NCBI GenBank assembly: GCA_965637545.1
Contig: OZ281500.1
Span: 620,001-684,000, forward strand
Direction: 5' to 3'
Length of the DNA stretch: 64,000 nucleotides
Source of the DNA: Phallusia mammillata
Taxonomy: Eukaryota
In this document: piece after piece, positions 27,241 through 62,965 of the stretch
Numbering within the stretch: the first letter of the stretch is position 1
Layout of the letters: the number at the start of each line of letters is the position of its first letter
Notes under the pieces: generated by a model
Database searches by the model: none
Seen by the model: the letters and a program-made list of their open reading frames with translations, nothing else
Told to the model about the DNA's origin: nothing
Translations under genes and position numbers: made by a program

Positions 27241-27562
27241 TGTGCTTTTGTTTCGTGTTAAACAAAAATAATCTGCATCCACTGCCAAGAAAACAAAATA
27301 AGGACTGCCAAGCTAAGGCAGCTGTGCGAACTACCCGAATACCCTCAAGGCCAATTAACTCCTGCGCCTAATTCAACACATATTTGTGCGTTTGAAGGAA
27401 GTTCCAGTTTTTATTTTTCTACTGGGGTGCTGTATGTGTGGAAGAACTCTTGCCACTTCATTTGTACGTATTGCAGTTTTACCAACATCCAAGCTTAGGG
27501 CGGTATTACATCAAACCTTAGTGAACTTGAAAGTTATTAATGCTTAAACCCGAATCAAGTTT

Positions 27563-28806: not shown

Positions 28807-31492
28807 ATGAAGTCTTGCTTAGGTTTGATATTTGTTGCATTGATTTCGACGGTGACTCGTGTCACCTGTCAAAATGCCAGCGTACCTGTCAGTGTCACAG
28901 ATGCCAGCACAGAAGGTGCCACCAAACATCTCTGTCCGAGTATTTACAAAAATATCTACGACTTTGGCGGGCAGAATTGCTGCAAAGAAACATACGAAAC
29001 CTTCATAACCAGCTACAATTACCTGGAGGGAATTGGGTTTGCGTTTACCATGGAGAAATTGCGAGCGTGGAACTGTAGTGAATATTGGGAGCAATGTAAA
29101 TACAGACCACTGGCATTTAACCAGTTCAGCTCTCTTCTGTACGACCGGTTCTGCAACTTCACATTATACGAGAGCAAGTGTTTTGACGAAATAAAAGGTT
29201 GGTCTGGTTAAAGTGGCTGTAATTGTTGTTTGTTAAACATGTTTTCTGTCCCGTGCGTTAAAGTTTGTTCAATATGACCGAAAAAGTTGAAAGTAGCGGT
29301 AATACTTATACTTTAAGCGTGAAACTAGATTCTCCCAACTCCTTGCTTGGCAGGTGGTGACTTTAATGAACCGTATGTTTTTATATCAAGTTTATAAAAA
29401 AACAATAATTCATTTATCCTTTAGATTCCTTTAGAATGTAGCGGTAGTTACAATATTAAATGGCTGATGTTTAATATGGCGAAAAACACGGGACAAGCGT
29501 TTTTCGAAGCTCATGTATTTTACAGCATTGGGGAATAATGTGGAAACATCGGTAGCGGTGAAATCCCCGTGTCTGCAAGTCGCTGCGTATCAAACCGGTC
29601 GCAAATACGCTGAGGTCAGACGACTTTCGGTCGCTTTCTGCGGAACCGTTTGGTGCGGGTTTGACGAGAAAATGATGATTGATTTGGATTATTCCGCCTG
29701 GGATTGCTATCCAACCTCGTGAGTAATGCGATGTTGTCATAATTCTATTTTTGTTAAAATTTTGCAACAGTGCACCGTTGCCTGCAGCAAATAAAAATTA
29801 ACAAACGCGAAACGTACCTATAACAAGATTTTATTGTCAAGTTTAATAAAGTTTCACAGATATCAAAAGAAGTTAATTGTAACAAACGAAACAGAAAGTA
29901 TCGCATATCTGGCAAAATCGTTAAATTGCCAAGTAATTTATGTAAAAGCATGGAGCCAATAAATGATAAGCTGCAAACAGTGCACACTGTTTCGACCTAT
30001 AAGGTCTCATCAGTGCAGCTGGTGACGAGAGATCGGCCGCATTGGCTAGTGTAGCCATCAAATGGCACTCCAATTTGTGGTGAGCAACAGGGTACAACCC
30101 CATGCATCACCTAGTCTGTGCGATGCCACAACTGGGCATAGGCTACAGCACAGATGAAACTGGCTCACAAGTCACAATGACCAAGCAACTGCTTGGGAAC
30201 CAGCTGCACTGATGAGACCTTATATGTCGAAACAGTGTGCACTGTCTGCAAAGTAATTGTTTGGCACTTAGACATTAATCGAAACCTTCAAGTTTCTTAG
30301 AAATTGATAATCTCGGGTTGTTTCCAGATGTCAAGTCAGCACGATTGTGATTATGGCAATCAGTGGGATCCTAGCAGTCGTGACAACGTTGGCGAATGCA
30401 ACGATATTGGCTGTTATTACCCGAAACCCCAAGTTCAAAGGAGGTCATATGAAGTACAGACAGTCTCTTGCCGTTGCTGATCTGCTCGTTGGGATTTTTG
30501 TATTTCCCTCATTCATAGGAACGCTGTACTACAACGAAATCGGTCCGCTGTCAGTCTTGCCTGACTTAGTGACCTCCAACGTGTCACGGTATAACCAAAC
30601 TGACATGGGATTAGAACCCGGTGCGCCAATGAGCTACATCAACTTCGTAGGATTTGTGACCTGTCTGTCACTTATGGTGTCAGTTTACACTTTGATGTTC
30701 GCAAGCTTCGACAGATACAACGCTATCAGCTCTCCGCTTTCCTACTCTAGAGACACATCAGTACGTCGTGCCAAGCAACTGATCGTGGTGGTCTGGATCA
30801 TCTCCGCTGTTGTTTCTATCCTGCCCATCTGGACGCCGAATGTCCGACCTTACTTGCCGATAGTTGGAGGTTTAATTATCGGTGTGACACCCGAAGTGGG
30901 CGCCATCTTGTACGCGGTAACTCTCGCCCTTCCGCTCCTACTGGTCTGGATATTAAGCATCGCCACCATGTGCGTTGCTAGGCGACAAGCGCGACTCCGG
31001 AGTTCGATGGTTTCACGACAAGCCACGGGAAAAGCGAGCGTGGAGAGTCGCCTCAACAAGACTCTGTGGATCATGGTGACAGCATTTACCCTCAGCGTTC
31101 TGCCTGCTGCCCTTCTCAGCATGTTAAGCGGGGTCGGTCAAATCAGCTTCAACTACCCCGAAACACTGGACAAGGATGCCGCTTATGTCTTCACAGGTTT
31201 AGAGGTGGTCGCGGCGATGCTTCTGATGTGTAATAGTCTGTGGAATTGCTTCATCTACAGTTTGCGTAACAAGGACTTCAGGGCTGAAGTTTTGTCAAAG
31301 TACAGCAAAGTTTTCTCAGCATTTCGCTACATGGTTGTGTGTTCATGTTGTGGGTCTGTGGCGAGGGACGGAAGACGGAGGCTCAGCTCGGCCTTCACCA
31401 GTTTCAGACCGAGACAACGTAACAGAACCATTTCCGAGAACGTTACTCAACTGACATCTGTTGGAACCACCAAAGGACCGAGGAACACGTAG
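28807..31492 (+). CDS. GPCR-1: 12-Cys ectodomain + class A (rhodopsin-like) 7TM receptor, 3 exons
   Basis: Exons 28807-29197, 29526-29718, 30328-31492 (phases 1 and 2). Signal peptide MKSCLGLIFVALISTVTRVTC; 12 Cys; SLAVADLLVG (TM2), SFDRY (TM3), MCNSLWNCFIYSLRNKDFR (TM7/H8). Confidence 0.85.
29972..30250. mobile_element. MITE with ~50-bp TIRs in GPCR-1 intron 2
   Basis: TGCAAACAGTGCACACTGTTTCGACCTATAAGGTCTCATCAGTGCAGCT is mirrored by AGCTGCACTGATGAGACCTTATATGTCGAAACAGTGTGCACTGTCTGCA. Confidence 0.85.
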
Positions 31493-32329: not shown

Positions 32330-34469
32330 TTAAACTTCATTTTCCTCAGCGATTCCCTCCATGGTTGAAACGAACAACCGATCAGCATTAACATCGATCA
32401 CATAAGAATCGAACACTGAATCTGCCATCGCACTTTCCGACTTGTCGCTCAATTGTGCTGACTCATTATTAGTCGGCAATTTCGTGTTGGAATTCACATC
32501 GGAAGTAGTTGGAACGTTTTCGCTGAAGCCTTTGCTCGACTTGCTTTTAGATTCGGTCTCAGTACTTGCGCTGGTCAGGCGTGATTTATTTGAAGAAATC
32601 CCGCTGACTTTGGTGCTCTGTGCGTTGAACTGGGTACTTTCACGACGCAGCTGGTTAAGACGACTCCTTGTCGAATGAAAGTTTTTACGGATGTAGCCGA
32701 GACATTGTGTTATTCCCATTTTTGCCGCCAGTTCGCTGTACATGTCGTGCACTTCACCACGAAAATCCTTGTTCCTTGTGTTGTAGATGAATACGTTCCA
32801 CAGGCTGTTCGAGACTAAAATCACCACGGCAACAAACTCAGATGACGCAAACACCAACGCCGATGTTAAATCCAGCTGTCTGGGTTGAGAAAATTGAGTT
32901 TTCGGTAATCCTGAAAATGAAGCAGCGAGTACGACGATTGAAGGCAGCAAACATGCAGTGAATACTCCGACCATGATTGTCAGGGTTTTTGCGAGTCGAG
33001 CTTCAAGGTTTTCGTTACGTCTGCGGGACCTCGATGAAATATGTCTGCGGACCCGCGCGTGTTGCTTCGCCATCATATAAGTAGCAACTGTGGACGTCCA
33101 AACCAATAGAAAGGGAATGAACAATGCAAGTGCGTACATTATAACCGCTTCTTGTCCGGCTGAGCTGATGAGCACAGAAGCAACGAGGTTGTATTCAACC
33201 TGGGGCACGAAGAGTGGAAGACTTGCAAACAAGAAAGCAACCACCCAAATAACCACACAGAGAATACGAGCAAGTTTCTCAGCCTCGTGTTGGTTGTACT
33301 TCAACGGTTTAAAAACTGCCCTGAATCGGTCGATGCTTGCCACCATTAAAGTGTAAACTGAAACTACAAACGATGTGAGAGTAAAGAAGCCAACGAAGTC
33401 AATGTAACTGTATGAGATATGCTTGACGAAATCACCCGTCTGTTTGCGAATGGATATGTTAGTTGATGCGTTCACGTTTATACTTCCGTTGACAAGTGGG
33501 AATCCAATCACTTTCGTATCCACAGCTGCTTCGACTGACGGCCACACGAGCACTCCAAGTGTACTAATGCAAGTTGGAACAACTATCACACCAACGATGA
33601 GGTCAGCACAGGCCAATGACAGCTTGTAAACGGACTGGCTGTTCCGGAGTTTTTTGTTGCGACGAAATACTCCAATCACTGTGACGTTGGCTGTTATGAT
33701 GGCGATGGACAGGATGATTAACCCGATGAAAATGATAACAATGTTGGCACGGCATCTGTAAATGCAAAACAAATGTGTCTATATTTGTACTTTAATTGTA
33801 GGAATTTTTCGCAAGTGAGGTAGTATACCTAGCGCTCAAGCAGTTCCAGATGTCAATCACGCCGTTCCGGTATGACGCGTCATCCGTTCCGCACCAGTTG
33901 AGTTCACAGAAAGGCAAATTCGGTGCGACAGCCTCGTGATATTTGCCAAACTTATCATCGGATCTTTCCTTCTCGAACAAGGCGAGTTGAGTGCAGGGTC
34001 GCAAAAGTTGCTCGGTGTTAAGACGTGACGAGTCGAGCTGACCAACCATCGCTTGCCACGTCAACGAACTCACAGACTGTGGAAGAAGACGTGACACTTC
34101 GCTCCGACATGAACTTTCAAACTCTATTTGGTTGCAAAAGTACAGATAAACTGTTTTTGCAAACGGATTGAAATCGAAAGTCGGGTTTCTGCATTCGTTG
34201 GCGAACTGTGGACATTGCCACGATTTTAACATGAGCATGTACGTCGTAAGGTAGGATGCTCCATTTCGCCATTGAAACATCATCCAATCTTCCGATATAT
34301 TGCAGCAGTATAGTTGGTACGCCCTATTGCCCGGCAAATAACCAGGAGCAAAACCGCAATCCACCTCTGCTATACTTTGCAACGTATCCTGGCCATGACT
34401 TGTACTAACCATACAGATCAGGAAAATGGCCACAGCGATTAATAGGGAACTTCTAAATCCTGCTAGCAT
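32330..34469 (-). CDS. GPCR-2: 12-Cys ectodomain + class A 7TM, 2 exons
   Basis: Exons 34469-33829 and 33755-32330, with a 73-nt phase-2 intron (AG|gtatac...tttacag|A TGC). SIDRF; VSNSLWNVFIYNTRNKDFR; long Ser/Thr tail ending FDSYVIDVNADRLFVSTME. Confidence 0.92.
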
Positions 34470-35939
34470 TTTTGCTTATTGAAAATCTGAAAAAAGTAAA
34501 ACTGGTTTTAATAAACACAAACTTTTACAGCAAATTTTCTCCACCTTTTTGTGTTTTCCCGATGTGAGTAGAACATGCTTAAGCAAAGCTACCTTTAATC
34601 TGGGTGTCATTACAAATTAGTTCAGTGTGCAGAAAAAGAAAAAAAAATGCTTTAAAATAAACAATAGTTTTCGTGGGCCGTAGTAGAACAACAGAGATAA
34701 CGTCACAACCCTTACATCCCGGAAAGGAAGCGGAAGTTGTTATGTCACGTTGTATAAAGGTGGGCAACGTCACACAAAACCTGAAAGTTTCTTTGCCCTG
34801 TCTCAAAACTGATTTAAGGCGCTAAGAATATCGTGCGCCTGTGTATGTCGCCTTGTGATGATGACCTTTGATTTATCAAGTTAACCTTTTCCCTTTTTTG
34901 CTTCTCACAACGTCATAACATTTCATACTCGAAATGATTTTATTGCAATGATGTCCTTGTGATATTCATTGCTGAACAAACTAAACCCAACCCTACCTTG
35001 GCAGATAAATAGAATTTCAAATTTCGAAATGTCCTTTCGTCCGTCCAATATTTCATTCTATACCCAAATAATAGAAGTAGGGCTTCGTACCGTCTAATAT
35101 AAGGTATAATATAATGAGGCCTATGTGTTCCGAGAAAGTTATAAGAGTCACGTTATTGCGAACGGGTTAAAACTTTCCGTTTTCATCTCTTTTCTGGTTC
35201 GAGTAACATCACGGGGTTCGCAGAGCAGACCCTTCGTCGTCTCACGCCCCCGGTTCGACAGTCGGTCATAAAGAATCATACAGGGCACTTGTGCTAAACA
35301 TAAACTGGCACGATAATGCTAAAAACATATTGCTTAAGAAGATGGAAGTAGACTGCCAGGAAATTGTGATCGGTTTAACTCAATTATCATTTTAGTTTTT
35401 ATTGGTAGTGCTAAGAACCTGATGTTAGTCATTCCTTTTTAAGGACATTATTTTGCGAAATTAAAACTGGATAAAGTATTGAAAAGAGCACTAGCTGCAA
35501 AACGCGCAAACTCTGGTTATTGTCGGCATTCTGTAAGCATTTTCATTCAGCACGACGTGGAGAAGTCTAGTTTTGCGGCGGGATTCGAACCCCGGCTGGA
35601 AAAACCTGCGGTTTGTTAAAAAAATATTGGCCCTTTCATCACAACACACGCACTTTGAAAATTAATTTACCGTGTCAGCAGTGCTGGATTAACCTATAAG
35701 CAATATAAGCACGTGATTAGGGCATCAAGTAAAGAAGGGGCACCACAGAAATGGTTTCTAGGTAAATTATTGAATCTAACAAAAAACTACAACTATATTC
35801 AAAATGTAATGAAATGAATAAGTTCTGTTTATAAAGCGAGAAAATGGAATAAAATAACTGACAAAAGGGATTGATTGCGTGCTATATGACGTAACAACGT
35901 TGTGTTGTTCTGTTTGTTAAAACCTGAAACAGTCAAGAC

Positions 35940-36219
35940 TCATGGGTGCCCAACCCGTCGATCGCGATCGACTGGTCGATCTCGGACTGATATCTTTGTG
36001 CTGGTACTTTTTCTATGATCAAGATTAGCATCGGATGAATTATAAAAAAATTAGGTTCAATGCAGTGTAAAAAGTCACACCCAAACCACGATAAAAAACG
36101 TAAAACAGGGCTCGGAAAATGCGAGTTTTCCTTTGGTAATACACACATTGGAATGGTAAATCCCGAGAGTTGGACTACCCCAAACGTCGATCTTGAGTCA
36201 AAAAGATTGGGCACCCCTG
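35940..36219. mobile_element. Nested hAT-type MITE
   Basis: TIRs CATGGGTGCCCAA / TTGGGCACCCCTG; GTCAAGAC duplicated at 35932-35939 and 36220-36227; GTCGATC subterminal repeats. Confidence 0.85.
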
Positions 36220-36250
36220 GTCAAGACAGTAAGGAAATGAATGCTTAGTT

Positions 36251-36799
36251 CAGTGGTTCTTAACCGGTGGGAAATTTCCCACTAGTGGGAAATTTAATGT
36301 TTTTAGAGGGAAATTATGTGAGTCAGAAGTCACCAAACTCGGGCCCGTGGGTTGAAATTAACCGTTGAAAATTAATTTAATACAATATTTTCCGCAACAA
36401 CATGTAAGATTAAGATCACCTAGTTTTACAAGGCGCATAAAAATCCAAAAATCGTTTGTTACGTCACAGAAGTTACTAAAAGTATCAATGACTTTGTTAT
36501 TGTTCGCGAATATATGCATTTGATCTGTTGATTATGATGCAATAAATGACTAACGCAAGCATATGAGATTTTTCAAAATTCCACACGATTTTACTTTCTC
36601 ATGACTATTCAACTCAATAAGATTGCAGTATACCTTTAAGGTCCCAACCAAATCGCTTCGCTTCAAGTATTTCGATTAAACAATAACTTTTTTGTTAATG
36701 TTGGGCACAAAACATCATTATAAAAATAACAGCGGGGGAAATTCGAACTTGATGATTTACTTCAGTGGGAAACCACACAAAAAAGGTTAAGAACCACTG
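36251..36799. mobile_element. Nested hAT-type MITE
   Basis: Perfect TIRs CAGTGGTTCTTAACC / GGTTAAGAACCACTG; exact TSD GCTTAGTT at 36243-36250 and 36800-36807; GGGAAAT(T) subterminal repeats. Confidence 0.92.
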
Positions 36800-38565
36800 G
36801 CTTAGTTAATAGCATGCTGTTTGAAAACATATTCGCGTATGTGGTAAACGTAAATTAAACACGACGCTAATACTAGTATGTTTTACAATTGGGAAACAGT
36901 GCTGAGACTGGGGAAGGCAAAATTAGGCGTTTTTAATTGAGTTTTGAAGTATTTCTGACATTCTGAAACAAATCTGCCAGTTTAATATCAGCTAAGCTTA
37001 TAGTCTATTATCCTTGCTGTATATTATGTTAAAATCGAAATCTCGATAAATAATTTTGTTTCTACGTTTATATTTCGAATTAAAAACGGTGTAAGGGGCA
37101 CCAAATTGTTTTAGTGCTTAGGGCCTCTAATGGTGTTAATCCGGCCCTGCGTGTCAGTAAAACTTTTGTTTCATGCGAAAACACTTCACTGCTGTTGCTT
37201 TGAAGTGCGTCACACCCTGTTGACATCACCATTTCTCATCCGGTTGTAGTGAGATGGTGAGACTTGATCACATATGATGACTAACCGATAAAGAGTTACA
37301 ACGCATGCAGGTGAAATCATCTTTCTACTACATTTGTTTTGTCTATCTTATGTCGCAATTAAATATGCTGGTTTCATTTTTACATTTGCAATCATTGCAG
37401 TTTATGCAAAAATAAATCCATGAGCTTAATAAATTTATGCAAACATTTGGTAAATGAAACGAAAAACGAAACTGCTTGGAATTATCCCGGGTTTGCAGTT
37501 ATTTTTATTCGTGTGTAATTAATCTTTCCGTATTCCTCTCACGCTATTCTTCCACGAACAACGTGCTTATTTTATTACGCAATTGCTGCATGATGGAACC
37601 TCCCTAATGCGAAGGAGATAACCTGCATGAAGAACACACAAGTTCGGGGAAAACTTCAAGTTAACTTCAAGTTTGTGGGCGAGGTCAATAATTTTTCTTT
37701 TTTTAATTGCACAGGAATAAGACAATTCGACATACTTCAACGTACTTCAACGTTTATGCACCTTTAGAACATTTGAAATACAACTTAGCTTAGTCGTTTT
37801 TGGTCACAGTGTTTTTAGAGTCTGTTTTATGTGCTTACAAGCTTTAAAACATGTTTTGTAAGTGAGTGGATAATATCTGCAAGATGTTCGCCGCAGTAAT
37901 TCTGTGTTTTTAGCCTCGCAAGCAAGAAAGCGGTATATGTCATGTACTACTTTAGTGAGCCTTCCATACGTGTCAGCAGTGCAGAATTAAATCAAGACCT
38001 AATGCTTCGAAAAATTACCCGAAATAGAAATATACCGTGCATGAGGTGAGTAAATTAGAGCAGAACGTGTAGCGACGAAGTGGTGCGCGTATAAAAGCCA
38101 ACCTCGATGTTCATGTGCACGTGTTGAGGGAACCTCAGACAACAAGTTGCAAACGGTGAAACATGTTGCTGTGATTCAGTGTCTCTCAGCTAAAAACATC
38201 GAACTACGCAAATGCAATTAAGAATCACCAACCTGTATCAAGTTGCGTGTTGCGTAACAGCCGAGTTTGTCAGGCAATATTGTTTCTCAGAAGTCTGTGA
38301 CTTGAGCACACCTATTGTTTTGTTGTCGGGTTGAGACTATTTCGCAGGGGCAAACAATGCATTTGGTAACACCAATAAGACGGATATAGTTATACAATGT
38401 TGAAAGGTTGGAGAACGTTGTATACTATAAAGTACACACCGATGGATGGAAGTTAAATCAGGAAAGGCATAGGTTTACGATACTACTATATGTCATCTAC
38501 AAGCTTTTTTTTCTACTTTAAGATCATTTATTTCCAAGATAATTGAAATTGAAGCATTCTATAAC

Positions 38566-40753
38566 ATGAAAGTTTTTCTGTGTCTGCTGCTTGGTCTGGC
38601 ATTTGCGAGAAGTTCAATGCAATCCCACTTGGATTTGGAGACCGAAATAAATCGATGTGGCTTTGCTCCCGGTTACCGACCTGGAAACGAAACCTTCCAA
38701 CTACATTGTTGCAACGTCAGTGAAACCAACATGCTCAAAAACTGGAAGAAAGGTTCCTTATACCTCACGACGTATTTGCTCAACTTAAAATCGTGGCAAT
38801 GTCCTCAGTTCGCCAACGAATGCAATAAACCGACTTTCGATTTTAATCCGTTTTCAAAAACAGTTTATCTCTACTTTTGCAACCAAATAGAGTTTGAAAG
38901 TTCATGTCAGAGCGAAGTGTCACGTCTTCTTCCACAGGACACGCCGGTCAGTTCGTTGACGTGGCAAGCGATGGTTGGTCAGCTCGACTCGTCACGTCTT
39001 AACATCGAGCAACTTTTGCGACCCTGCACTCAACTCGCCTTGTTCGAGAAGGAAAGATCCGATGAGAAGTTTGGCAAATATCACGAGGCTGTCGCACCGA
39101 ATTTGCCTTTCTGTGAACTCAACTGGTGCGGAACGGATGACGCGTCATACCGGAACGACGTGATTGACATCTGGAACTGCATGAGCGCTAGGTATACTAC
39201 CTTACTTGCTAAAAATTCCTACAATTAAAGTACAAATATAGACACATTGGTTTTGCATTTACAGATGCCGTGCCAACATTGTTATCATTTTCATTGGGTT
39301 AATCATCCTGTCCATCGCCATCATAACAGCCAACGTCACAGTGATTGCAGTATTTCGTCGCAACAAAAAACTCCGGAACAGCCAGTCTGTTTACAAGCTG
39401 TCATTGGCCTGTGCTGACCTCATCGTTGGTGTGATAGTTGTTCCAACTTTCGTAAGTACACTTGGAGTGCTCATGTGGCCGTCAGTTAAAGCAGCTGTGG
39501 ATACTAAAGTGATTGGATTCCAACTTGTCAATGGAAGCTTGCACAACACCTCAACCATTGCCTCATACCAAAAACCAACCGGGTATTTAGCAACACATCT
39601 TACACGGGGTTACGTAGGCTTTGTTGGCTTCTTTACCCTCACGTCGTTCGTAGTTTCAGCTTACACTCTAATGGTCGCAAGCATCGATCGATTTAGAGCA
39701 GTTTTCAGGCCTTTAAGGTACAACCGACACGAAGCCGAGAAGCTTGCCCGTAGTTTGAGCATCGTCATATGGATCATCAGTTTTATATTTGCAAGTCTTC
39801 CACTTTATGTGCCAGGACTCAACTACAGTCTCATCGCTTCTGTGCTGATCGCATCGTCAGGTTCGGATGAGGTTGTTGTCCTTTACGCCGTCGCTATCGG
39901 AATCCCGCTCATAGTGGTGTGGGTCACAACTACATCAACGTATGTAATGGCGAGAAAACATGCGAGAAAGCGAAAGAACATCTCGACCTCTTCACACGAT
40001 CGTAACAAGAACATGGAACAACGACTTGTCAAAACTCTGGCCATCATGGTTGGTGTTTTCACGTTGAATCTCCTTCCTGCTATTATTGTCCTTGTTGCTT
40101 CGATCGGTTCAAGCAACATTAGTTTCTCGAAACCGAAGCAACTTGATTTGATACCAGGATCGATTTACGCTTCGTCGGAGTTTGTGGCAATAGTCGTGCT
40201 GGCTTCCAACAGTTTGTGGAACATGTTCATCTACAACGCAAGGAACAAGGATTTTCAGAATGTAGCTGACAGCATGTTTGAGGGAATCAAATCCACCCTG
40301 GGAATAACCAGATGTTTGCACCAGATTCGAAGTTCGTGCGGCTCCACCAAGCGGAGGTTGTCTAGTACAGGAGGAACAGTCTCATCCCCTTCCACCAACT
40401 CAACCGGTCTGTCATCGAAAAAAACCACCTCCTCTCAGAAGTTTTCATCAACCAGCCCAACGCAAAGCAAAACGATGAAAAGCTCAACATACAGCAGTTC
40501 CGCTATTGATGAAGAAAGCGTTAACCAATCCGAAGGCAACAGGAAAATAAAACAGGCACATAGTGCGACATCTGCCGACTGCGATGTAAACTCCAACACG
40601 AAATTGCCGACTAATAATGAGTCAGCACAACTGAGCGACAAGTCGGAAAGTGCGATGGCAGATTCAGTGTTCGATTCTTATGTGATCGATGTTAATGCTG
40701 ATCGGTTGTTCGTTTCAACCATGGAGGGAATCGCGGAGGAGAATGAAGTTTAA
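38566..40753 (+). CDS. GPCR-3: 12-Cys ectodomain + class A 7TM, 2 exons
   Basis: Exons 38566-39191 and 39265-40753, with a 73-nt phase-2 intron. SIDRF; ASNSLWNMFIYNARNKDF; C-terminus identical in protein to GPCR-2. Confidence 0.92.
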
Positions 40754-42121: not shown

Positions 42122-44826
42122 ATGTGGTTTGCAAATCACTTTGCATTTACGATTTTCGCCTGCATACTGTTCACTCTCGGGTGCGCGCAGATTGATGGCA
42201 ATTCCACTTCTGAAGGGCCGCAAGTGAAATGCCGTTATGTGCCTGGAATGTATCTTGGAAGCCGTCAGCGCGAGTTAGAGTGTTGCAACTCAACGGTGGA
42301 GTATTTCGAATCTCGTTGGGCAACCGGCGAACTATTCCTCACTCGGTACCTTGGATCTCTACAAGCATGGAAATGTCCGCAATTTGAAGTCGAGTGCCAG
42401 AAACCAACTTTCGCTTTTACTGAGTACACCAAACTCGTGTACGATTACTTCTGCAACCGCACACAGCTTGTGAACAAATGTATGGACGTTGTAAATGATA
42501 TTGTGGAGAATACAGCAACTGAGTCACTCCAAACTACCCAGCCTGTTGTTATTGCAAGCACAAGTTTGGAAGGTTCAGGGAATGTTCCAATGGTCGTGGA
42601 TGACAAATGGAACTCCTCTGTGGAACAGTTGAGACTTCTGCCTTTAGGAGTCGAAGATCTTATGAAACCTTGTGTACAAGTCGCTCTGTTTGATTCAGAG
42701 CCGGAGAAAGTAAACAACTACCACGAGATTGTCCACGCTGATATACCGGGATGCGACCTTGTGTGGTGCGGGATTGATGGAGATGTTGCGAGGAGCAGTC
42801 AGATCACAGCGTGGACTTGCATGAAACCTCAGTAAGTATTCGCTGTGAAACGTATGAGGTAAATGTTACTAACTAAACATGTATAATCATCTTTACACTT
42901 CTGATCAAAGCAGATTGTATAGAAATGCAGCACCAAAATTATGCTAAAAATTTAAATGTCATTCACGTCAATATAGTTTACTTTTAGAAAAAAGGGCTTC
43001 CAGTTTAGGCAATCCACCATCTTATTAATAGCAAAGCATAAATCCGTGCAAAATATTCGATATTTTCGTGCTGCATCATCATAAAATGTGTTGACTCAAA
43101 CATGTTGATGCTAAATAATATGTTAATTAAACGACGAAGAGATGTTGTTGTTGCTTGCAAAGTTTTTAAAAAGTAGGATAGTCGCAAAAAATATTCGTTA
43201 CATTACAGAATTATTTTACTATAACTATAGTAAAATTGATTGATTGAACTTTTTGTTGTGTTTAACAGATGTCGATCTGGGATTACGGTGATCATGGTTT
43301 TCTGTGCCTTACTTGCTCTCATCGTCACTGTAGCAAACCTAACTGTTATAGTTGTGATATTTCGTAATCCGGCAATTCGACACAGCCAGGCAATTTACAA
43401 GCTGTCCCTTGCCTTCGGTGATATTCTGGTTGGGCTGATTGTATTTCCTACGTTTATATCAACTTTCACCAAGCTTACTTTGACGCCTCACCCACACGGC
43501 AGTCTCGAGACAGTCCAGGGATACAATATATATAGTAACGGGACAGTGGCTTCTAATCTTTCGGATTTTATGTATCGTAAACCGGGAGGCGCCACTGCCA
43601 CACTCTTGGGCGAAGCCTACATAAACTTTGTAGGGTTTTTCACCACTTTGTCACTGATGGTTTCGATCTATACTCTCACAGTGGCTGGATTTGATCGACT
43701 CACGGCCGTGTACCGACCTCTGCAGTACAGAAAGGACAAAGCAAAGATTCTTGCCAAAAAAATATGTGCGGGAGTTTGGGTCTGTTCTGTTTTCTTCGCA
43801 ACTTTGTCCTTCTATGTCCCCGGTCTGCAATACAACCTCATCGTGTCATTCCTGATTTCATGCGGCGGCTCAAATGCTCTAATCCTGTACGCCTTAGCTT
43901 TTGCTGTCCCGATGATTATTATGTGGGTTGTCTCCTTAGCAACATATCACTCGACACGGAAACACGCCCAGGCACGTCGGCATCTCACCAAGGATTCAAG
44001 GCACAAGACGAGGTCGGTGGAAAACAGGCTGGCTCGTACTCTCTCACTCATGGTGGGAGCTTTCACTGTCAGTCTCCTTCCTGCTCTGGTAGTTCTGCTG
44101 GTTCCTTTGTTTACTGTCAGCGTCTACTTCAGTCGTCCAAGAGATTTCAGTTTGTCATCTGCATCCGCTTTTGTCGCTGTTGAGTTCACCGCCATGTTAA
44201 TCATTGTCTGCAACAGCTTGTGGAACTTTTTCATTTACAGTGCGCGCAACCTGGAATTCCGTCGCGTCGTCAAGGTCATGTACAAAGACATCGCTGAGAA
44301 GACCAAGCTGGCGTGGTGCTGGGATTCGACAGTCATTTGCACTCGCCGGGTGGCGCACGAGGGCGCAAGAAGATTCTCGAACATACCAAGTCTTAGCAAC
44401 AGCACAGCAGGAGGAAGAAAGAAGAGCCTTGCATCCGAGCTGACATCCACAACAAAATTGCGACGCGAGTCCAACACTATCACCAACCAGACCACGTCAC
44501 GAGGCGTATTGTCGTCTGACGTCATAAAGAGTTCTGATGCGTCACACTCGAGCACACAGGACACAATGAGCAAGACGAATTTGGAGAGCTCAACTGTTGT
44601 GGAAAGTAAGGGAAAGATTTACAAACCAAAGTATGCGAAGAATCCGAAGATAAAAGGTGGGAAGAAGGAAGAGGACGGCAAGGATGCCAGTGATGACTCG
44701 ATTTTCAACTCGTTTGCGATCGACGCGAATGCAGACAGACTCTTCCTCTCTGTGATGGAAAACATTGATGAGGGAATTGAAGAACCAGAAAACAACAAAG
44801 AGAAATACGAGCAGAGCAAAGCCTGA
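42122..44826 (+). CDS. GPCR-4: 12-Cys ectodomain + class A 7TM, 2 exons
   Basis: Exons 42122-42831 and 43269-44826 (CA|gtaagt...aacag|A TGT). GFDRL; VCNSLWNFFIYSARNLEFR; tail contains FNSFAIDANADRLFLSVME. Confidence 0.92.
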
Positions 44827-53545: not shown

Positions 53546-55682
53546 ATGTCAGTAGCAAGGAAGTTTGTAACCTTGCTTGTGCTGGTGTTAGCGATTGTTG
53601 TGGTGGGTTGTAAAGCTAACCACCCTGTCAATTGTGAATACGCTCCAGGAATGAACGTTAACACGACCGTGTGTTGCGATTACGTGTCCAGACAATTTTC
53701 TTCCTACTGGGCGAGTGGCGAATTTTATTTGACGTCATACCTGGCAAGTTTGAAGGAGTGGAACTGCAAACAGTTTGACAAGGAATGTCAGCAACGGACT
53801 TTCGCGTACACCCGGTTTAGCGGTCTTGTGTACGACCGGTTCTGTGGCGACAATGTTCTGGTAGAGCAATGCAGTGCAGAGGTTATTGGGGCGACTCTGG
53901 CGCAGAATTCGTCACTTTCCAGAACTTGGCAGAACGCTGTAAACGGTTTGGACGCCACAAAATTGTCGGACGATCAACTGCGAAGTCCGTGTTTGCAGAT
54001 TGCCATGTATGAACGAGATTCAGGAGGTTTTTCACATTACCATGAAGTGATTCAACCATTTACTCCCTTCTGCTCGTTCGTGTGGTGTGGTTTTGACGAG
54101 AAACTTGTGAAGGAAGGCAGAGTGTCGGTGTGGACGTGTTTACCACAATCGTAAGTTGGATGATATGTTGTGCGTTGCAAGCAAGATAATGTGAGCCTTT
54201 CAAACATAGCTTACATTAAAAGCAACATGGGGATCAAGATCTGGTCCAGAGTAACTGCATAATTTAAACAAGTGGTAAAGCAAATAAATGATAGATAAAA
54301 AAGTTGCAACTGTAACAAGTTTATATTGTGTGCTGTAACATCGAAAACTTAAAATCATGGCCCATATGCAACATGCATGCCTATCATATCCGGTGATGTC
54401 ACGAACACGTGACTGTCAATTGTTTATGATGTTTATGTATCCGGGTTTATGCAGACAATCCTCGAAGCCTCTTCCGTGTTTAAATCTGCTGTGTTTATGT
54501 TCCAGATGTCGGTCAAGCATTATAGTAATGATGGTCTTCAGTGTGCTGCTTGCAATTGCAATAATCGTTGCCAACGCGACCGTCTTGTCCGCTTTGGGGA
54601 AATACCCTCGCATACGCCACAACCAAGCTATTTACCGCTTCTCTCTGGCGCTCGCCGACATCGTGGTTGGTTTGATTGTGTTCCCTACATTCGTCAGCAG
54701 TCTGTACATGCAATTCCACGGCTCACACGAGCTCGGAAAACTACGCAATGTCACTGGTGTTGTTGTCAACGGCTCGCTGGTTCCACAACAGTTTGCTGTA
54801 CGCGACCCTAGCGGCCAGTTTTCCAACCGCGTTCCACGCCAGTACCGTAACTTCGTCGGATTTTTCACAGTCCTGTCACTTTCGGTGTCGATTTACACAT
54901 TGGTTGCGGCTGGAATTGACCGCTGTGTGGCGCTCTCGTTCCCAGCTCGTTACAGAAAAACGTCGAAGGTTCCAATCGGCTTGATTGCGAATATTTGTAT
55001 TTGGATTCTTTCTGTTATATTTGCTGTTCTCCCGTTTGCTGTGGACTTACTGGGTTACACGCTGGTTGCGTCCATACTTGTGTCATCATCCGGCCCGACA
55101 GTTCTAATCCTTTACATCATAATCTTCGTGATTCCTCTAATTCTCATGTGGACTGTGACCATCGCTTCTTACGTCATATCGCGGAAATACGTCATCAGCT
55201 GGAGGCGGTATTCGGTCGGTGACGATCCGACAAACGGACAAGGAGCAAGCGAGAGTCAGTTGGCGAGAACATTTGGAATCATGGTCGGTGTCTTCAGCTT
55301 AAGTCTCGTTCCTTCGATCATCGTGTTGATCTGTGGCGCCACCTTGAGCACGATCTACTACAACAGACCGAACGAATTGATCCAAGAGTCCGCTGTCGCT
55401 TACACGTCAACCGAAATCGTGGTGATATTTATTCTGATGTGCAACAGCTTGTGGAATTGCTTCATCTACAGCGTGAGAGACCGGGACTTCAGGGCAGCAT
55501 GCAAGGAGATGTACGGGAATGCTGGTGCGATGGTTGGATTAAAGTGTTGGCAAGTTGAAGAGGTGGAGAGGACGAATGGTGTCGCAATGGAGGGGGGAAA
55601 TTCTGACGACAACTTTCCACAAACGCTTGCTTCTGGCGTTGATAAGACCGTGGTGGATAACGCTCAAACCACTACCATATAA
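53546..55682 (+). CDS. GPCR-6: 12-Cys ectodomain + class A 7TM, 2 exons
   Basis: Exons 53546-54150 and 54506-55682 (TC|gtaagt...ttccag|A TGT). GIDRC; MCNSLWNCFIYSVRDRDFR. Confidence 0.92.
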
Positions 55683-56329: not shown

Positions 56330-58474
56330 ATGTCTGTAGCAAGGAAATTTGTAGCTCCGCTTGTGCTTGCGTTAGCGAGTGGTTTGGTTGATTGCAAAGC
56401 TCAGCAACCTGTGAGTTGTGAATACGCTCCAGGAATGAACGTCAACACGACCGTGTGTTGTGATTACGCGTCCAAGAACTTTCACATCTTATGGTCGAGC
56501 GGCGAATTTTATTTGACGTCATACCTGGCAAGTTTGAAGGAGTGGAACTGCGATCATTTTGGCAAGGAATGTCGGCAACGGACTTTCGCGTACACCCGGT
56601 TTAGCGGTCTTGTGTACGACCGGTTCTGTGACTACGATGTTCTGGTAGAGCAATGCAGTGCAGAGGTTATTGGGGCGACTCTGGCGCAGAATTCTTCAAT
56701 TCCAAGAACTTGGCAGAACGCTGTAAACGGATTGGACGCCACAAGATTATCGGACGATCAACTGCAAAGTCCCTGTTTGCAGGTTGCCATGTATGAACGA
56801 GATTCAGGAGGTTTTTCACATTACCATGAAGTGATTCAACCATTTACTCCCTTCTGCTCGTTCGTGTGGTGTGGATTTGACGAGAAACTTGTGAAGGGAG
56901 GCAGAGTGTCGGTGTGGACGTGTTTACCACAATCGTAAGTTGGATGATGTGTTGTAGGTTGCAAACAAGATAATGTGTCAGTTATAAACATGAACCACGT
57001 CAAAAATAACTGGTTTGACCTAACGTATCTGTAACTGTAAAATTTAAACATGTGGCGAGGCAAATAATTGGTAAATCCCAAATGTTGCAGCTGTGAGCGG
57101 TTTGTATTGTGTACTGTCGCGCCGAAAACTTTAAATCCTGGCCCATATGCAACATGCATGTTTGTCATATCCGGTGGCATCACGAACACGTGACTATCAG
57201 TTTTGAGCTGTTGATTACGATGTTTATGTGTTGCGGTTGATTTGCAGACAATCTCTCTAGTATTCTAGTATTTCAATCTGTTGTGTTTATGTTCCAGATG
57301 TCGGTCAAGCATTATAGTAATGATGGTCTTCAGTGTGCTGCTCGCCATTGCAATAATCGTTGCCAACGCGACCGTCTTGTCCGCTTTGGGGAAATACCCT
57401 CGCATACGTCACAACCAAGCTGTTTACCGCTTCTCTCTAGCGCTCGCCGACATCGTGGTTGGTTTGATTGTGTTCCCTACATTCGTCAGCAGTCTGTACA
57501 TGCAATTCCACGGCTCACACGAGCTCGGAAAACTACGCAATGTTACTGGTGTTGTTGTTAACGGCTCACTGGTTCCACAACAGTTTGCTGTACGCGACCC
57601 TAGCGGCCTGTTTTCCAACCGCGTTCCACGACAGTACCTTAACTTTGTCGGATTTTTCACAGTCCTGTCACTTTCGGTGTCGATTTACACATTGGTTGCG
57701 GCTGGAATCGACCGCTGTGTGGCGCTCTCGTTCCCAGCTCGTTACAGCCAAAAGTCGAAGGTTCCAATCGGCTTGATTGCGAATATTTGTATTTGGATTC
57801 TTGCTGTTATTTTTGCTTCGCTTCCTTTTGGTGTTGACTTATTAACTTACCGGTTTCTGGTGTCTACACTCGTCTCATCATCTGGTTTGACGGTCATTTA
57901 CCTTTATATTGTGATCTTTGTGATTCCTCTAATCCTCATGTGGACTGTGACCATCGCTTCTTACGTCATATCTCGGAAATACGTCATCAGTTGGAGGCAG
58001 AACTCGGTCGGTGACGATCCGACGAACGGACAAGGAGCAAGCGAGAGTCAGTTGGCGAGAACGTTTGGAATTATGGTCGGTGCCTTCAGCTTAAGTCTCG
58101 TTCCTACCCTTGTTGTGTTGGTATTTGGCGCCACTTTGCCTACTATCTACTATGACAGACCGACCGAGATCGACCAAGAATCCGCTGTTTCCTTTATTTC
58201 AGCTGAAGTCGTGGTGATATTTATTCTGATGTGCAACAGCTTGTGGAATTGCTTCATCTACAGTGTGAGAGACCGGGACTTCAGGGCAGTATGCAAGGAG
58301 ATGTACGGGAATGCTGGTGCGATGATTGGCTTAAAGTGTTGGCAAGTTGAAGAGGTGGAGAGGACGAATGGTGTCGCAATGGAGGGGGAAAATTCTGACT
58401 CTAACTTTCCACAAACGCTTGCTTCTGGCGTTGATAAGACCGTGGTGGATAACGCTCAAACTACTGCCATATAA
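56330..58474 (+). CDS. GPCR-7: tandem paralogue of GPCR-6, 2 exons
   Basis: Exons 56330-56934 and 57298-58474; exon lengths (605 and 1177 nt) are the same as in GPCR-6. Confidence 0.92.
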
Positions 58475-59650: not shown

Positions 59651-61141
59651 ACTACGATTTTAGCAAAAACTTAACCAAACTATGTCTCGGAAATATTTGT
59701 TTTGGGCAACTAATATTAAACATCTTATTTTTGAGCTTTGCTCATGTCAAACGCTGAACAATTAGTGTTGCAAACCAATTTTGCAAGTCACTGTGCTAAT
59801 AGTGGTGTTTGCTTTTAATGTGAATACGTTTGCGATTATAAATTTAGTCCCAAGCCGTGAGGTAAAATAAAATGTCAAACGTCGTAAGAAAGTAAGAACG
59901 CGAGTTATAAATAACGAGGCCTCTTGGAAAATATGGTAATCAATTATTACAGATGTCGTCCACCAAAATAAAACACAAACCTTAGAAATATGGACCATAC
60001 TTGCACAAAGTGATGTTTATGAAGAGATCTTAAGCTTACATTTGTTGTAGTGTATCGTTCACATTTCCAAACAGTAACTCAACTGTTTATTCCGTGCTTC
60101 AATTCCTAGCAATAGCACGCTTAAACAGTAAAAAAAAACCGACTTTCAATTGTAACCACAAAGTTGTTGCGGAATTTGTAAGGCCAAACCACTGTTTGTC
60201 AATGTGTGGTGTTGCATTTGATAATCAACAAACCAAATCACGTCGCGTACTCATCAAGAAAGGTAATTAATCATAGCAAGTCACGGTGCAAACATCTATT
60301 GCCCTGTTTACTGGTGATGGTCCCGTTACTATGTTGTCGCGATTGTTGGTTGTTTACAGTTTTGGAACCCAGATTCGACCAAACACAATAGTTGGGAAGA
60401 AGTCAGTGTGAACTATTATAAACGTTTATAGTGCAATCTATGTGTCAAATATTTGCAGTTTGTGTAGATCATACATAAAGAATTGTTTGCGAAGTGAATT
60501 ATTTTTTTGGCAAGGACAATATATTTTAAAGTTCCCCTAATCGACGTTAAAATGGTGGTGAATGCTTGATGACCGACTGATTCGGTATGGTGCCTTCAAA
60601 GGGCCAGGCCTACTGTGATTTATTAATCGTGTGTTTTTTTAGGCGTGTTTTGGCGTAGGCTACGCCACCCTCCGACTCACTAGTCGTGCAAAAAGTCGTG
60701 AGAAGAGTGTTTAGTCCACAGCTATGTACGACGTCACCAATTGAACTGCCACGATGTATGGTACAAAAAGGGCTTGTGTACTTGTGTTGAAAAACGTGCA
60801 AAATTGGTATTGTAGTTTGTTGTCGTTGATACCTGCTGATTGGGTGTAGAGTTGGAAATGCGAACTAAATATAAAACTTCAACTAATTGAGTTTCTGATA
60901 TTGTTTGGGGTTACCAGGTAGGATGTTGTCTAGTTGTGGTCTACATGTTCGAAAAAGTAATATCAGTGAAAGATTATTAACGACCTGTAGTTTCAGGTGA
61001 TAATTCATTTTTTAGTCGTACCCTGATTCTCTGAAATGTAAATCAACGACTTGAAAGAAACAACCAACTTTTAAAACCTGTGTACCTTATCGGTCTTGAT
61101 AGTACCGTCATAGGTTGATCGTTTTGTTGCTTGACATTGTT

Positions 61142-62965
61142 ATGTCTACGTTGTGTGGGAAGTTACTCATATTAACGTTCGTTGGCTCTTTAATGTTTCC
61201 TGAACTGTGTGCGGTGGAACACAGAAACGTGACGCCACAAACAGTCACAAGTGACACAAAGTTTCTCACATACAGCACTTCTATTCATTGCAAAGCTCTC
61301 ACCCGTAAGTTTCACTCATGGTGGTTCACGTTTAAAGGCGGGTTAGCAGAATATCTTGCGACCCTTCGATCTCTGGGTTGTCCGTAGTTTAAAGAAGAAT
61401 GCAGCAAGAGATTGCTCGCCATCCCTTTCCCTCTCTCATCTACGACAGCTTCTGCTCTCCACAAAGCATCGTGGACAAGTGTTACCCAATGCTCAAGTCG
61501 CTGGTGAAACGTCGCAATTCTAATTATGACAACATGACTATAATACTTCATCGTACGATTGGGCTTCAGCAGCTGATCTTTTAAATGATGTTCGGCTTTC
61601 GGAGAATGAACTGAAGGAGCCTTGTGTCCAGGTTGCCTTGTATGAAATATCAAACTGCACTTTTCATGAACTTGTGATTCATAGTGCTCTATTTTGCTCC
61701 GTGCATTGGATGGGATACGATGCAAGAATGGACGTAAACCGCCGCTTAACGCAATGGAAAATGTTAGATCACAGGTAAACTGGTGTAAACTTTTTTGCCA
61801 AAACTGTTTGTGACTATAACGGCATTTTGAAATAAAAGCACTTGAAAACGACTGAGCAAACTTTGACATGTTTAGAGGTCTTGAATATCCTGTATTCATA
61901 AGGTGTATGTATAATTTCAACACTAGACAGAAGGCATACCTTATTGTAACCCTACCGTGTCTCAGGTGCCATATCAACACTTACATACTTCAAGTAGTGT
62001 GCGGTATTTTATCATTTCTTTTCACCGCTGTGAACTCTCTGGTGATAGTCGCTATAGCGAAAGAACCGAGTCTACGTCATACCCAAGGCATCTACAGACT
62101 CTATCTGGCAATATCTGACGTCATGGTGGGAGTTATCGTATTTCCTGCATCAGTTATTAATCTATGGATTTTAACGCATGGAGTGTTGAATAATTACAAG
62201 GAAGAGAATAGTTTGTGCGAGAATGGAACTAGTATTTACTCGCCAAGGGAATGGCAATTCCGGTTTACAATAGATTCACCTCAGTACATTGCCTTTGTTG
62301 GTTTCGGAACGCACTTGTCATTATTTGCATCCGTTTACATTCTCATGGTAGCGGGATTAGATCGACTCCGGGTTGTAATACATCCTCTGAAGTATCGACA
62401 AGACATAGCTAAGAAAACAGCCTAACGGGCTTGTATCGTTGTGTGGATATTGGCTTTTATTTTTGCCACACTTTCATTTTTTCCTTCTATTTCGACGTAT
62501 GTTTTATATACTTCGAGCTATGCTATATTGATAGGTAAATGGGGTTATGTGATATACGTGGTCGCTTTAGTTTTCCCGCTCTTAATTGTCTGGTTTGTCA
62601 ACTTTGCCACTTATTTCTTCACAAAACTTAACAGCCGCGCTACATCGAACAACGGGATTGATCCGGTCGAGGTACAACTGGCAAAAACCCTGCTTATGAT
62701 AACCTTGGCCTTCACCTTGAGCATCCTGCCATCGATTTTGCTGTTAATTGCTCAAATGAGTGTAACCGATATTGGTTTGCAGCGGCCTGAAACCTTAAAC
62801 ATTGCCGCATATCTGAATGTCAACGCGCTTGAATTCGTTGCTTGGACAATTTTATCATCCAACAGTTTATGGAACTTTTTTATTTACAGCGTTCGAAGTC
62901 CTACTATGCGAAAAGCGATCAAATGCTTGTTTGTAAATATGTTTTCTAGAAATTCAGCTAAGTGA
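61142..62965 (+). pseudogene. GPCR-8 pseudogene (same family)
   Basis: Exon 1 ~61142-61774 has a TAG at 61385 (CP*F where paralogues have CPQF) and frameshifts near ~61415 and ~61530. The phase-2 intron is retained in place (AG|gtaaac...ctcag|G TGC, exon 2 from 61966). There is an in-frame TAA at 62423 after GLDRL; SSNSLWNFFIYSVRS is still recognisable. Confidence 0.88.

What the first reader, a model, noticed from the sequence alone, without database searches (positions are those of the whole stretch)
53546..54510. Rigid 12-cysteine signature defines a candidate new extracellular domain
Counted in GPCR-1, 2, 4, 5 and 6: C-x(12-16)-CC-x(29-30)-C-x6-C-x18-C-x8-C-x(20-63)-C-x(22-28)-C-x4-C-x16-C-x4-C, with the last Cys abutting TM1. 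The x6, x18, x8, x4, x16 and x4 spacers are invariant even between very diverged paralogues. Other conserved residues include W before C4, (F/Y)xxxxYxxFC, PCxQxA(L/M/A)(Y/F), Y(H/A)E, WCGxD and WxC. Only the C7-C8 loop varies greatly (20, 35, 39, 63 aa). Inference: a compact, probably helical fold with about six disulfides and one hypervariable loop.
Basis: partly seen in the sequence, partly recalled or inferred. Interest (0 to 1): 0.8.

Follow-up and report, generated by a model that had tools for sequence, protein, structure and literature searches.

The report
Undescribed cysteine-rich ectodomain of sea-squirt peptide receptors
A cluster of sea-squirt receptor genes carries a real, conserved 12-cysteine outer domain that matches no known protein family or solved fold; it belongs to a receptor family in which one member is already known to sense a small neuropeptide.

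Summary
The window holds seven intact genes and one decayed gene for class-A GPCRs. Each has a signal peptide and a ~175-aa ectodomain with the stated 12-Cys spacing. A phase-2 intron just before Cys12 is conserved in all seven. RNA-type contigs from two studies show exactly the predicted 54150/54506 splice for the gene in the finding.

A profile of the ectodomain finds 191 clusters among 1.84 billion proteins. All 30 that carry a name come from ascidians, and every full-length hit has the domain N-terminal to a 7TM. No stand-alone copy was seen.

The receptors themselves are not new. One family member is the published Ci-LF-1 neuropeptide receptor of Ciona (Shiraishi 2019), and that paper never mentions the ectodomain.

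Most likely this is a tunicate-specific, TM1-anchored extracellular module of short-peptide receptors. A role in ligand recognition is inferred, not shown. The scan had noted this array before only as a gene-conversion mosaic.

The parts
53546..54150 (+). Gene F exon 1: signal peptide (about residues 1-25) and ectodomain with Cys1-Cys11
   Evidence: ORF and GT donor at 54151. Cys spacing. RNA-type contigs end at 54150 and rejoin at 54506.
53873..53989 (+). Gene F variable C7-C8 loop (residues 110-148, 39 aa)
   Evidence: This spacer is 20-63 aa among the window paralogues and 27-75 aa in the family.
54151..54505 (+). Gene F intron, phase 2, GT..AG, placed one codon before Cys12
   Evidence: The 54150->54506 joint is in contigs of 3 RNA-type runs from 2 studies, with no cover of the intron. 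A DNA run covers the intron. All 7 paralogues have an intron at this position.
54506..55682 (+). Gene F exon 2: Cys12 (54507-54509), class-A 7TM domain, C-terminal tail and stop
   Evidence: Pfam 7tm_1 E=2.6e-16. Nearest PDB sequences are beta-adrenergic, TAAR, alpha-1 and A2A receptors at E about 1e-8.
28807..31492 (+). Paralogue A (582 aa). Exons 28807-29197, 29526-29718, 30328-31492, with an extra intron inside the C7-C8 loop
32330..34469 (-). Paralogue B (688 aa). Exons 34469-33829 and 33755-32330
   Evidence: 100% identical to database protein P0025. This is the protein modelled.
38566..40753 (+). Paralogue C (704 aa). Exons 38566-39191 and 39265-40753. Head-to-head with B
   Evidence: Its ectodomain is 84% identical to B's; its exon 2 is 67% identical.
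42122..44826 (+). Paralogue D (755 aa). Exons 42122-42831 and 43269-44826. Has the longest C7-C8 loop, 63 aa
48504..51117 (-). Paralogue E (594 aa). Exons 51117-50513 and 49683-48504
   Evidence: Groups with F and G in the tree.
56330..58474 (+). Paralogue G (593 aa). Exons 56330-56934 and 57298-58474. Recent tandem duplicate of F
   Evidence: F-G dN/dS is 0.59 in the ectodomain and 0.25 in the 7TM.
61103..62962 (+). Paralogue H, decayed. The ectodomain is spread over three frames, WCG has become WMG, the WxC Cys is lost, and there is an in-frame stop in the 7TM part

Best explanation
The 12-Cys region is a real, folded, disulfide-rich ectodomain of about 175 aa. It is mostly alpha-helical with one beta-hairpin. 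It is found only in ascidian class-A GPCRs, and it is always the N-terminal part of the receptor. Its last Cys lies in the first turn of TM1, so the domain sits directly on the 7TM bundle rather than on a flexible tether.

The window carries a tandem array of seven such receptor genes plus one pseudogene. The family includes the Ciona Ci-LF-1 receptor, which responds to a short neuropeptide at nanomolar concentration. The window genes are therefore most likely receptors for short peptides.

Inferred mechanism. The conserved, membrane-proximal C-terminal half of the ectodomain (PCxQxA, YHE, PFC, WCGxD, WxC, Cys9-12) probably packs against TM1 and the unusually long ECL1 and ECL2 hairpins. Together they would form a vestibule over the binding pocket. 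The variable N-terminal segment and the C7-C8 loop would tune which peptide is admitted or bound.

Shown: the domain, its conservation, its fusion to the 7TM on one mRNA, its restriction to ascidians among the named hits, the absence of any known family or fold, and homology to Ci-LF-1-R.

Inferred: the disulfide pairing, contact with the extracellular loops, and a role in ligand recognition.
For: - Cys pattern and gene models. Model B equals an independent database protein.
- The splice joining ectodomain and 7TM is present in RNA-type contigs of 2 studies.
- Profile search of 1.84e9 proteins: 191 hits, 160 at E<=1e-10. All 34 hits of at least 400 aa have the domain at the N-terminus followed by 5-9 hydrophobic segments. 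The short hits are exon-1 ORFs or truncated receptors.
- 30 of 30 named clusters are from Ciona, Styela, Clavelina, Botryllus or Phallusia.
- No family or fold match.
- AF2 ectodomain model: pLDDT 94.3, pTM 0.90. The full receptor gives pLDDT 91.3 and pTM 0.88 with the same secondary structure. The TM1 helix starts two residues before Cys12. ECL1 and ECL2 carry beta-hairpins.
- Cys12 is conserved in 49 of 50 full-length rows.
- The cluster of P0085 holds UniProt A0A1W5B9R1, 'Ci-LF-1 receptor'. F's ectodomain is 37% identical to it, E=2e-39.
- Ci-LF-1-R has an EC50 of 5.25 nM for Ci-LF-1. The LF receptors form a urochordate-only clade (PMC6475428).
- Co-loss of C10 with C11, and of C1 with one Cys of the CC pair, suggests disulfide partners.
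Against: - No experiment or model here shows that the peptide touches the ectodomain. The published assays used full-length receptors, and the prediction method behind them used TM descriptors only.
- F, G and E lie in a different subclade from Ci-LF-1-R, so their ligands need not be LF peptides, or peptides at all.
- I could not read the model's coordinates. Disulfide pairs and ectodomain-loop contacts are therefore not verified. The high pTM is only indirect evidence for a fixed arrangement of the two domains.
- AlphaFold DB was not searchable, so a matching fold among unsolved proteins is not excluded.
- Only 30 of the 191 clusters were checked for taxon.
Confidence: 0.7

Rival explanations
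1. The ectodomain is a structural cap or folding and trafficking module. It covers the pocket, as the N-terminal caps of lipid-type class-A receptors do. It is needed for stability or surface delivery but takes no part in ligand selectivity, and the peptide binds only within the 7TM and loops.
For: The domain is rigidly joined to TM1. The family lacks any conserved Cys at the top of TM3 or in ECL2, so the usual class-A disulfide is absent; from my own knowledge, cannabinoid, S1P/LPA and melanocortin receptors share this absence. The LF peptides are short enough to fit a 7TM pocket. The 2019 paper reports that several Ciona candidate receptors failed to express in heterologous cells.
Against: The C7-C8 loop and the N-terminal segment differ strongly between paralogues while the core is fixed. 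That pattern is more typical of a specificity surface. The ectodomain dN/dS between F and G (0.59) is higher than that of the 7TM (0.25), though the counts are small.
Confidence: 0.25
2. The family is a lineage-specific sensor of external cues, a chemoreceptor-like repertoire in which the ectodomain binds waterborne or microbial molecules. The peptide responses of a few Ciona members would then be only part of its function.
For: The genes form a tandem array with a pseudogene and recent duplicates. There are many divergent copies per species; at least 14 of the named clusters I looked up are from Styela. Ci-LF receptors except LF-8-R are reported as specific to the oral and atrial siphons. Ciona lacks olfactory-type receptors according to PMC2396169.
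Against: Five Ciona members respond to endogenous neuropeptides at 0.7-5 nM with selectivity. Several subclades each contain members of more than one ascidian genus, which does not fit fast birth-and-death alone. dN/dS is below 1.
Confidence: 0.12
3. The domain is a very divergent member of a known cysteine-rich helical fold, such as Frizzled/Smoothened CRD, folate receptor/riboflavin-binding protein, GFR-alpha, RAMP, saposin or PLA2.
For: Helical, disulfide-rich ectodomains recur on receptors. Sequence searches can miss such relatives. AlphaFold DB was not available.
Confidence: 0.05

Closest known systems
Ci-LF-1 receptor of Ciona intestinalis (UniProt A0A1W5B9R1, BBC53701.1, KH.C4.122; Shiraishi et al. 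2019, PMC6475428) and the 'urochordate LF-R clade'
   Same: The architecture is the same and homology runs over the ectodomain and the 7TM. Ectodomain identity to F is 37%, E=2e-39. It is class A and 21-26% identical to cannabinoid, adenosine and adrenergic receptors, as found here for F. The clade is tunicate-only.
   Different: F, G and E sit in another subclade, together with Ciona XP_002123433 and Clavelina LOC143445492, and their ligand is unknown. Ci-LF-1-R lacks Cys1 and Cys2 and has two extra Cys in the variable loop. The paper's main text does not describe the ectodomain: 'cysteine' and 'extracellular' each occur 0 times.
Frizzled/Smoothened cysteine-rich domain (class F GPCRs)
   Same: A helical, disulfide-rich ectodomain sitting N-terminal to a 7TM.
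   Different: It has 10 Cys with different spacing and is joined through a linker. There was no Pfam Fz hit and no structural match.
Class B1 hormone-receptor ectodomain (two-domain peptide binding)
   Same: A possible functional analogy: a disulfide-stabilised ectodomain that helps a 7TM receptor recognise a peptide.
   Different: It has a different fold with three disulfides and a different GPCR class, and its ligands are long peptides of 30-40 aa. Here the domain is fused straight onto TM1. No sequence or fold match was found.
Class-A receptors with large ectodomains (LGR/glycoprotein-hormone/relaxin receptors; Ciona LDL-A repeat GPCRs, PMC2396169)
   Same: Class-A 7TM with a structured N-terminal module. 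The Ciona LDL-A receptors show lineage-specific expansion in ascidians.
   Different: Those modules are LRR or LDL-A repeats with known folds. This domain is a single non-repetitive helical unit with no known relatives.
N-terminal caps of lipid-type class-A receptors (S1P1, CB1; from my own knowledge)
   Same: The pocket is covered from above by N-terminal structure. The canonical TM3-ECL2 disulfide is absent.
   Different: Those caps are short segments or single helices, not a 175-aa domain with 12 Cys.

Membership tests
Class A (rhodopsin-like) GPCR | 7TM domain matching the rhodopsin-family profile and fold | tested here: met
   Pfam 7tm_1 E=2.6e-16, 60.3 bits against a cut-off of 30.5. Foldseek of the full model hits the A2A receptor at TMt 0.83, plus beta-1/beta-2 adrenergic and orexin receptors.
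Class A (rhodopsin-like) GPCR | Conserved micro-switch motifs (N1.50, D2.50, DRY, CWxP, NPxxY) | tested here: inconclusive
   N1.50, D2.50, D-R of DRY, P6.50 and N7.49..Y7.53 are at least 98% conserved. The residue at 7.50 is Cys or Val rather than Pro (motif NSLWNxFIY), and no column at the 6.48 position reaches 80% conservation (the modelled protein has L, not W).
Ascidian LF-neuropeptide receptor family (Ci-LF-R clade) | Sequence homology to a deorphanised Ci-LF receptor over the whole length | tested here: met
   The P0085/P0195 (Ci-LF-1-R) ectodomain matches the window-based profile at E=7.6e-42. F against Ci-LF-1-R ectodomain gives 37% identity, E=2e-39. They form one family in the tree.
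Ascidian LF-neuropeptide receptor family (Ci-LF-R clade) | Placement in the same subclade as the characterised Ci-LF receptors | tested here: not met
   E, F and G group with Ciona P0002 and Clavelina P0003 (SH-aLRT 99). Ci-LF-1-R groups elsewhere, with P0097, P0068, P0108, P0104 and P0089. Only LF-1-R could be placed.
Ascidian LF-neuropeptide receptor family (Ci-LF-R clade) | Activation by an LF-type peptide | not testable with these tools
   This needs a cell-based assay such as the G-alpha-q16 calcium assay of PMC6475428.
Frizzled-type CRD | Fz profile match and the Fz helical fold with five disulfides | tested here: not met
   None is listed by Foldseek-PDB or by VIA-align over 48,161 representatives. 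There were no Pfam hits.
Class B1 hormone-receptor ectodomain (HRM) | HRM profile or fold | tested here: not met
   No Pfam hit and no structural match.

The most novel reading that the evidence does not exclude
The ectodomain is a truly new protein fold that arose in the tunicate lineage. It would be the ligand-selecting part of a large, tandemly expanding receptor repertoire expressed in the siphons. On this reading it serves as the ascidians' substitute for the olfactory-type receptors they lack, with the hypervariable C7-C8 loop as the recognition surface, and it also senses endogenous LF-type peptides.
Probability: 0.15. Interest if true: 0.8.

Novelty: new variant of a known kind. Interest (0 to 1): 0.55.

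Why it matters
Structured ectodomains on class-A GPCRs are few, mainly LRR and LDL-A modules. A confidently modelled domain of about 175 aa with 12 Cys, no relative in Pfam or the PDB, welded onto TM1, would be a new way of building the extracellular side of a rhodopsin-type receptor.

One family member already has a nanomolar peptide ligand and a working assay. The question 'what does the ectodomain do?' can therefore be tested directly by deletion and swap chimeras.

It also bears on practice. [quoted passage not shown] In this family that would remove a whole folded domain.

Finally, the domain gives a clean marker (an HMM) for annotating these receptors. Automatic pipelines currently name them cannabinoid-, adrenergic-, dopamine-, histamine-, melatonin-, S1P- or thyrotropin-receptor-like.

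Tried and rejected
- The word-index search with the Ciona homologue's ectodomain (P0002, region 46-236) returned only itself and missed obvious relatives, so it says nothing.
- The ESM-Atlas feature search with F's ectodomain gave no usable hit.
- A PDB sequence search with one sequence and with the 116-row profile gave only chance hits at E>=0.18.
- The Pfam scan of all 116 members gave 28 families, each hit by 1-2 members. I rejected these as chance.
- The look-up of encoding contigs for P0002 found nothing on record.
- The supplement with the Ci-LF-R sequences is not held, so only Ci-LF-1-R could be placed in the tree.
- Literature searches for a description of the domain found none: the Ciona GPCR repertoire paper, the 2019 PNAS paper, a 2022 review and general searches. 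The library covers only open-access papers and bioRxiv.
- I could not obtain the models' coordinates. Disulfide pairs and the ectodomain-7TM interface could therefore not be read out. I used Cys co-loss instead, which resolves only C10-C11 and the pairs involving C1, the CC doublet and C4.
- I considered a stand-alone secreted form of the domain and rejected it. Short hits end at the exon-1 boundary or run on into TM1-TM2.
It aligns to B at 36% identity, with Cys1-Cys11 (all that its exon-1 reference covers) in register.

Full report
WHAT IS THERE

The window is eukaryotic DNA with GT..AG introns. A tblastn of the spliced gene at the finding against the window shows eight related loci between 28.8 and 63 kb. 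I built gene models from ORFs and splice sites.
- A: + strand, 28807-31492, three exons.
- B: - strand, 34469-32330.
- C: + strand, 38566-40753.
- D: + strand, 42122-44826.
- E: - strand, 51117-48504.
- F: + strand, 53546-54150 and 54506-55682. This is the finding.
- G: + strand, 56330-58474.
- H: about 61103-62962, decayed, with frameshifts, an in-frame stop in the 7TM part and lost cysteines.

In all seven intact genes a phase-2 intron lies one codon before the last cysteine. My model of B is 100% identical over 688 aa to an independently predicted database protein, P0025.

For F, contigs of three RNA-type runs from two studies join 54150 to 54506 (GT..AG) and do not cover the intron. A DNA run does cover it. 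The ectodomain and the 7TM are therefore on one spliced mRNA, and the gene is transcribed.

THE OBSERVATION

C4-C5, C5-C6, C6-C7, C9-C10, C10-C11 and C11-C12 are 6, 18, 8, 4, 16 and 4 in all seven genes. C7-C8 is 20, 37, 39, 63, 35, 39 and 39. The last Cys is the second residue encoded by exon 2.

The pattern holds in a 116-sequence family alignment. C5, C6 and C8 are invariant. The fixed spacers hold in 94-100% of rows. C7-C8 ranges from 27 to 75. It is not absolute: C10 and C11 are lost together in at least 21 members, and C1 plus one Cys of the CC pair are lost in several.

WHAT THE 7TM PART IS

Exon 2 matches Pfam 7tm_1 (E=2.6e-16). Its nearest solved relatives by sequence are beta-adrenergic, trace-amine, alpha-1 and A2A receptors at E about 1e-8.

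The full-length AF2 model superposes on A2A (TMt 0.83), beta-1/beta-2 adrenergic and orexin receptors.

Family-wide, N1.50, D2.50, the DR of DRY, P6.50 and N7.49..Y7.53 are conserved. Position 7.50 is Cys or Val, not Pro. No conserved Cys exists at the top of TM3 or in ECL2, so the usual class-A disulfide is absent.

WHO HAS THE ECTODOMAIN

A profile built from the window's ectodomains plus three homologues was scored against 1.84 billion representative proteins. It found 191 proteins at E<=1e-3 and 160 at E<=1e-10.
- All 34 hits of 400 aa or more carry the domain at the N-terminus, followed by 5-9 hydrophobic segments.
- Eighty short hits stop within 12 residues of the domain's end. These are exon-1 ORFs, and they show that the intron position is shared across the family.
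- The few hits with longer tails either read into intron or continue into TM1-TM2.

I found no stand-alone form. All 30 clusters that carry a name are from ascidians: Ciona intestinalis, Styela clava, Clavelina lepadiformis, Botryllus schlosseri and Phallusia mammillata. Their names are 'uncharacterized' or contradictory automatic labels.

I did not test that.

IS IT A KNOWN DOMAIN?

- No Pfam family matches F or G at E<=1. None is shared among the 116 members.
- No PDB sequence matches, either with one sequence or with the profile (best E=0.18).
- AlphaFold2 on the 116-row alignment gives a very confident model for B's ectodomain: pLDDT 94.3, pTM 0.90, five models at 93.7-94.3. It has eight helices of four or more residues before the segment that joins TM1, one beta-hairpin (residues 146-165), and short C-terminal helices.
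- The same secondary structure reappears in an independent full-length prediction made from a different alignment.
- Foldseek against 350,542 PDB chains gives nothing better than E=2 and TM 0.21.
- The ESM Atlas gives TM at most 0.35.

The limit is that AlphaFold DB could not be searched.

THE RECEPTORS ARE NOT NEW

The 90% cluster of hit P0085 contains UniProt A0A1W5B9R1 / BBC53701.1, named 'Ci-LF-1 receptor'. F's ectodomain is 37% identical to it (E=2e-39).

Shiraishi et al. 2019 (PMC6475428) paired this receptor, KH.C4.122, with the Ciona-specific neuropeptide Ci-LF-1 at an EC50 of 5.25 nM. They paired four relatives with other LF peptides at 0.7-5 nM. They reported that the LF receptors are 21-26% identical to cannabinoid, adenosine and adrenergic receptors and form a urochordate-only clade. 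They also reported that the LF receptors, except LF-8-R, are expressed in the siphons.

The main text of that paper never uses the words 'cysteine' or 'extracellular'. Its prediction method used TM descriptors only. The Ciona GPCR repertoire paper does not describe the domain either. Within the searchable literature I found no description of the ectodomain.

In a maximum-likelihood tree of 38 full-length members, E, F and G group with Ciona XP_002123433 and a Clavelina protein (support 99). B, C and D group with other Clavelina proteins. Ci-LF-1-R lies in a third subclade. The window genes belong to the same domain-bearing family, but they are not orthologues of the characterised receptor.

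HOW IT PROBABLY WORKS

Shown or modelled:
- The full receptor model has pLDDT 91.3 and pTM 0.88 over 549 residues. With two domains of about 185 and 360 residues, such a pTM implies a confident relative placement (my inference).
- The TM1 helix begins two residues before Cys12.
- ECL1 is about 45 residues long with a beta-hairpin, and ECL2 has a hairpin.
- Cys12 is conserved in 49 of 50 full-length rows.

Inferred:
- The ectodomain is stapled to the first turn of TM1, probably by C9-C12 nested around C10-C11. The C10-C11 pair is supported by joint loss.
- Its conserved C-terminal half packs on the loops, forming a vestibule over the pocket.
- The variable N-terminal segment and the C7-C8 loop contribute to ligand selectivity.

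Between the recent duplicates F and G, dN/dS is 0.59 in the ectodomain and 0.25 in the 7TM. Both are under purifying selection, with the ectodomain more relaxed, but the counts are small.

Rivals. The domain may be a purely structural or trafficking cap. The family may sense external cues. The domain may be a highly diverged known fold. I rate these at about 0.25, 0.12 and 0.05.

VERDICT

The receptor family is published and partly deorphanised, and its proteins sit in public databases under misleading names. What appears to be undescribed is the ectodomain as a domain, and the lack of any known structural relative for it.

Its function is open but directly testable in an existing assay.

Noticed in passing
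window 14405-17572 (+): A single long ORF of 1055 aa with a signal-peptide-like start. It contains about 49 tandem copies of a 42-bp (14-aa) acidic repeat of the type EEVPKVQGE(D/E)TINQ (TRF 15220-17281, 84% matches). This explains the strong AT skew at 14-18 kb. It is probably a secreted repetitive protein.
   Followed up: partly
window 26881-27288 (-): An intronless ORF of 135 aa whose C-terminal ~90 residues look, from my own knowledge, like a histone H2B core. It lies just upstream of the receptor array. No search was run on it.
   Followed up: no
window 32330-40753 (genes B and C): B and C are head-to-head. They are more alike in the ectodomain exon (84% aa identity) than in exon 2, which holds the 7TM and C-tail (67%). 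F and G show a similar contrast in dS: 0.11 in the ectodomain against 0.25 in the 7TM.
   Followed up: partly
window 61103-62962 (+), gene H: An eighth family member that is decayed. The ectodomain reading frame is split over three frames, WCG has become WMG, the WxC cysteine is lost, and there is an in-frame stop in the 7TM part.
   Followed up: partly
7TM exons of all paralogues, e.g. window 54506-55682: Family-wide departures from class-A consensus. Position 7.50 is Cys or Val instead of Pro (NSLWNxFIY). There is no conserved Trp at 6.48. There is no conserved Cys for the TM3-ECL2 disulfide. ECL1 is about 45 residues long and predicted to form a beta-hairpin.
   Followed up: partly
window 28807-31492, gene A: A is the only paralogue with an extra intron (29198-29525). 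The intron lies inside the variable C7-C8 loop, which is also the shortest at 20 aa. A has the longest branch among the window genes in the tree.
   Followed up: no
database homologues (P0002, P0066, P0113, P0133, P0140, P0144, P0155, P0087, P0192): Automatic annotation gives members of this one family at least nine unrelated names: cannabinoid, beta-2 adrenergic, D1B dopamine, histamine H2, octopamine, melatonin, S1P3 and thyrotropin receptor-like, and rhodopsin Gq-coupled-like.
   Followed up: yes
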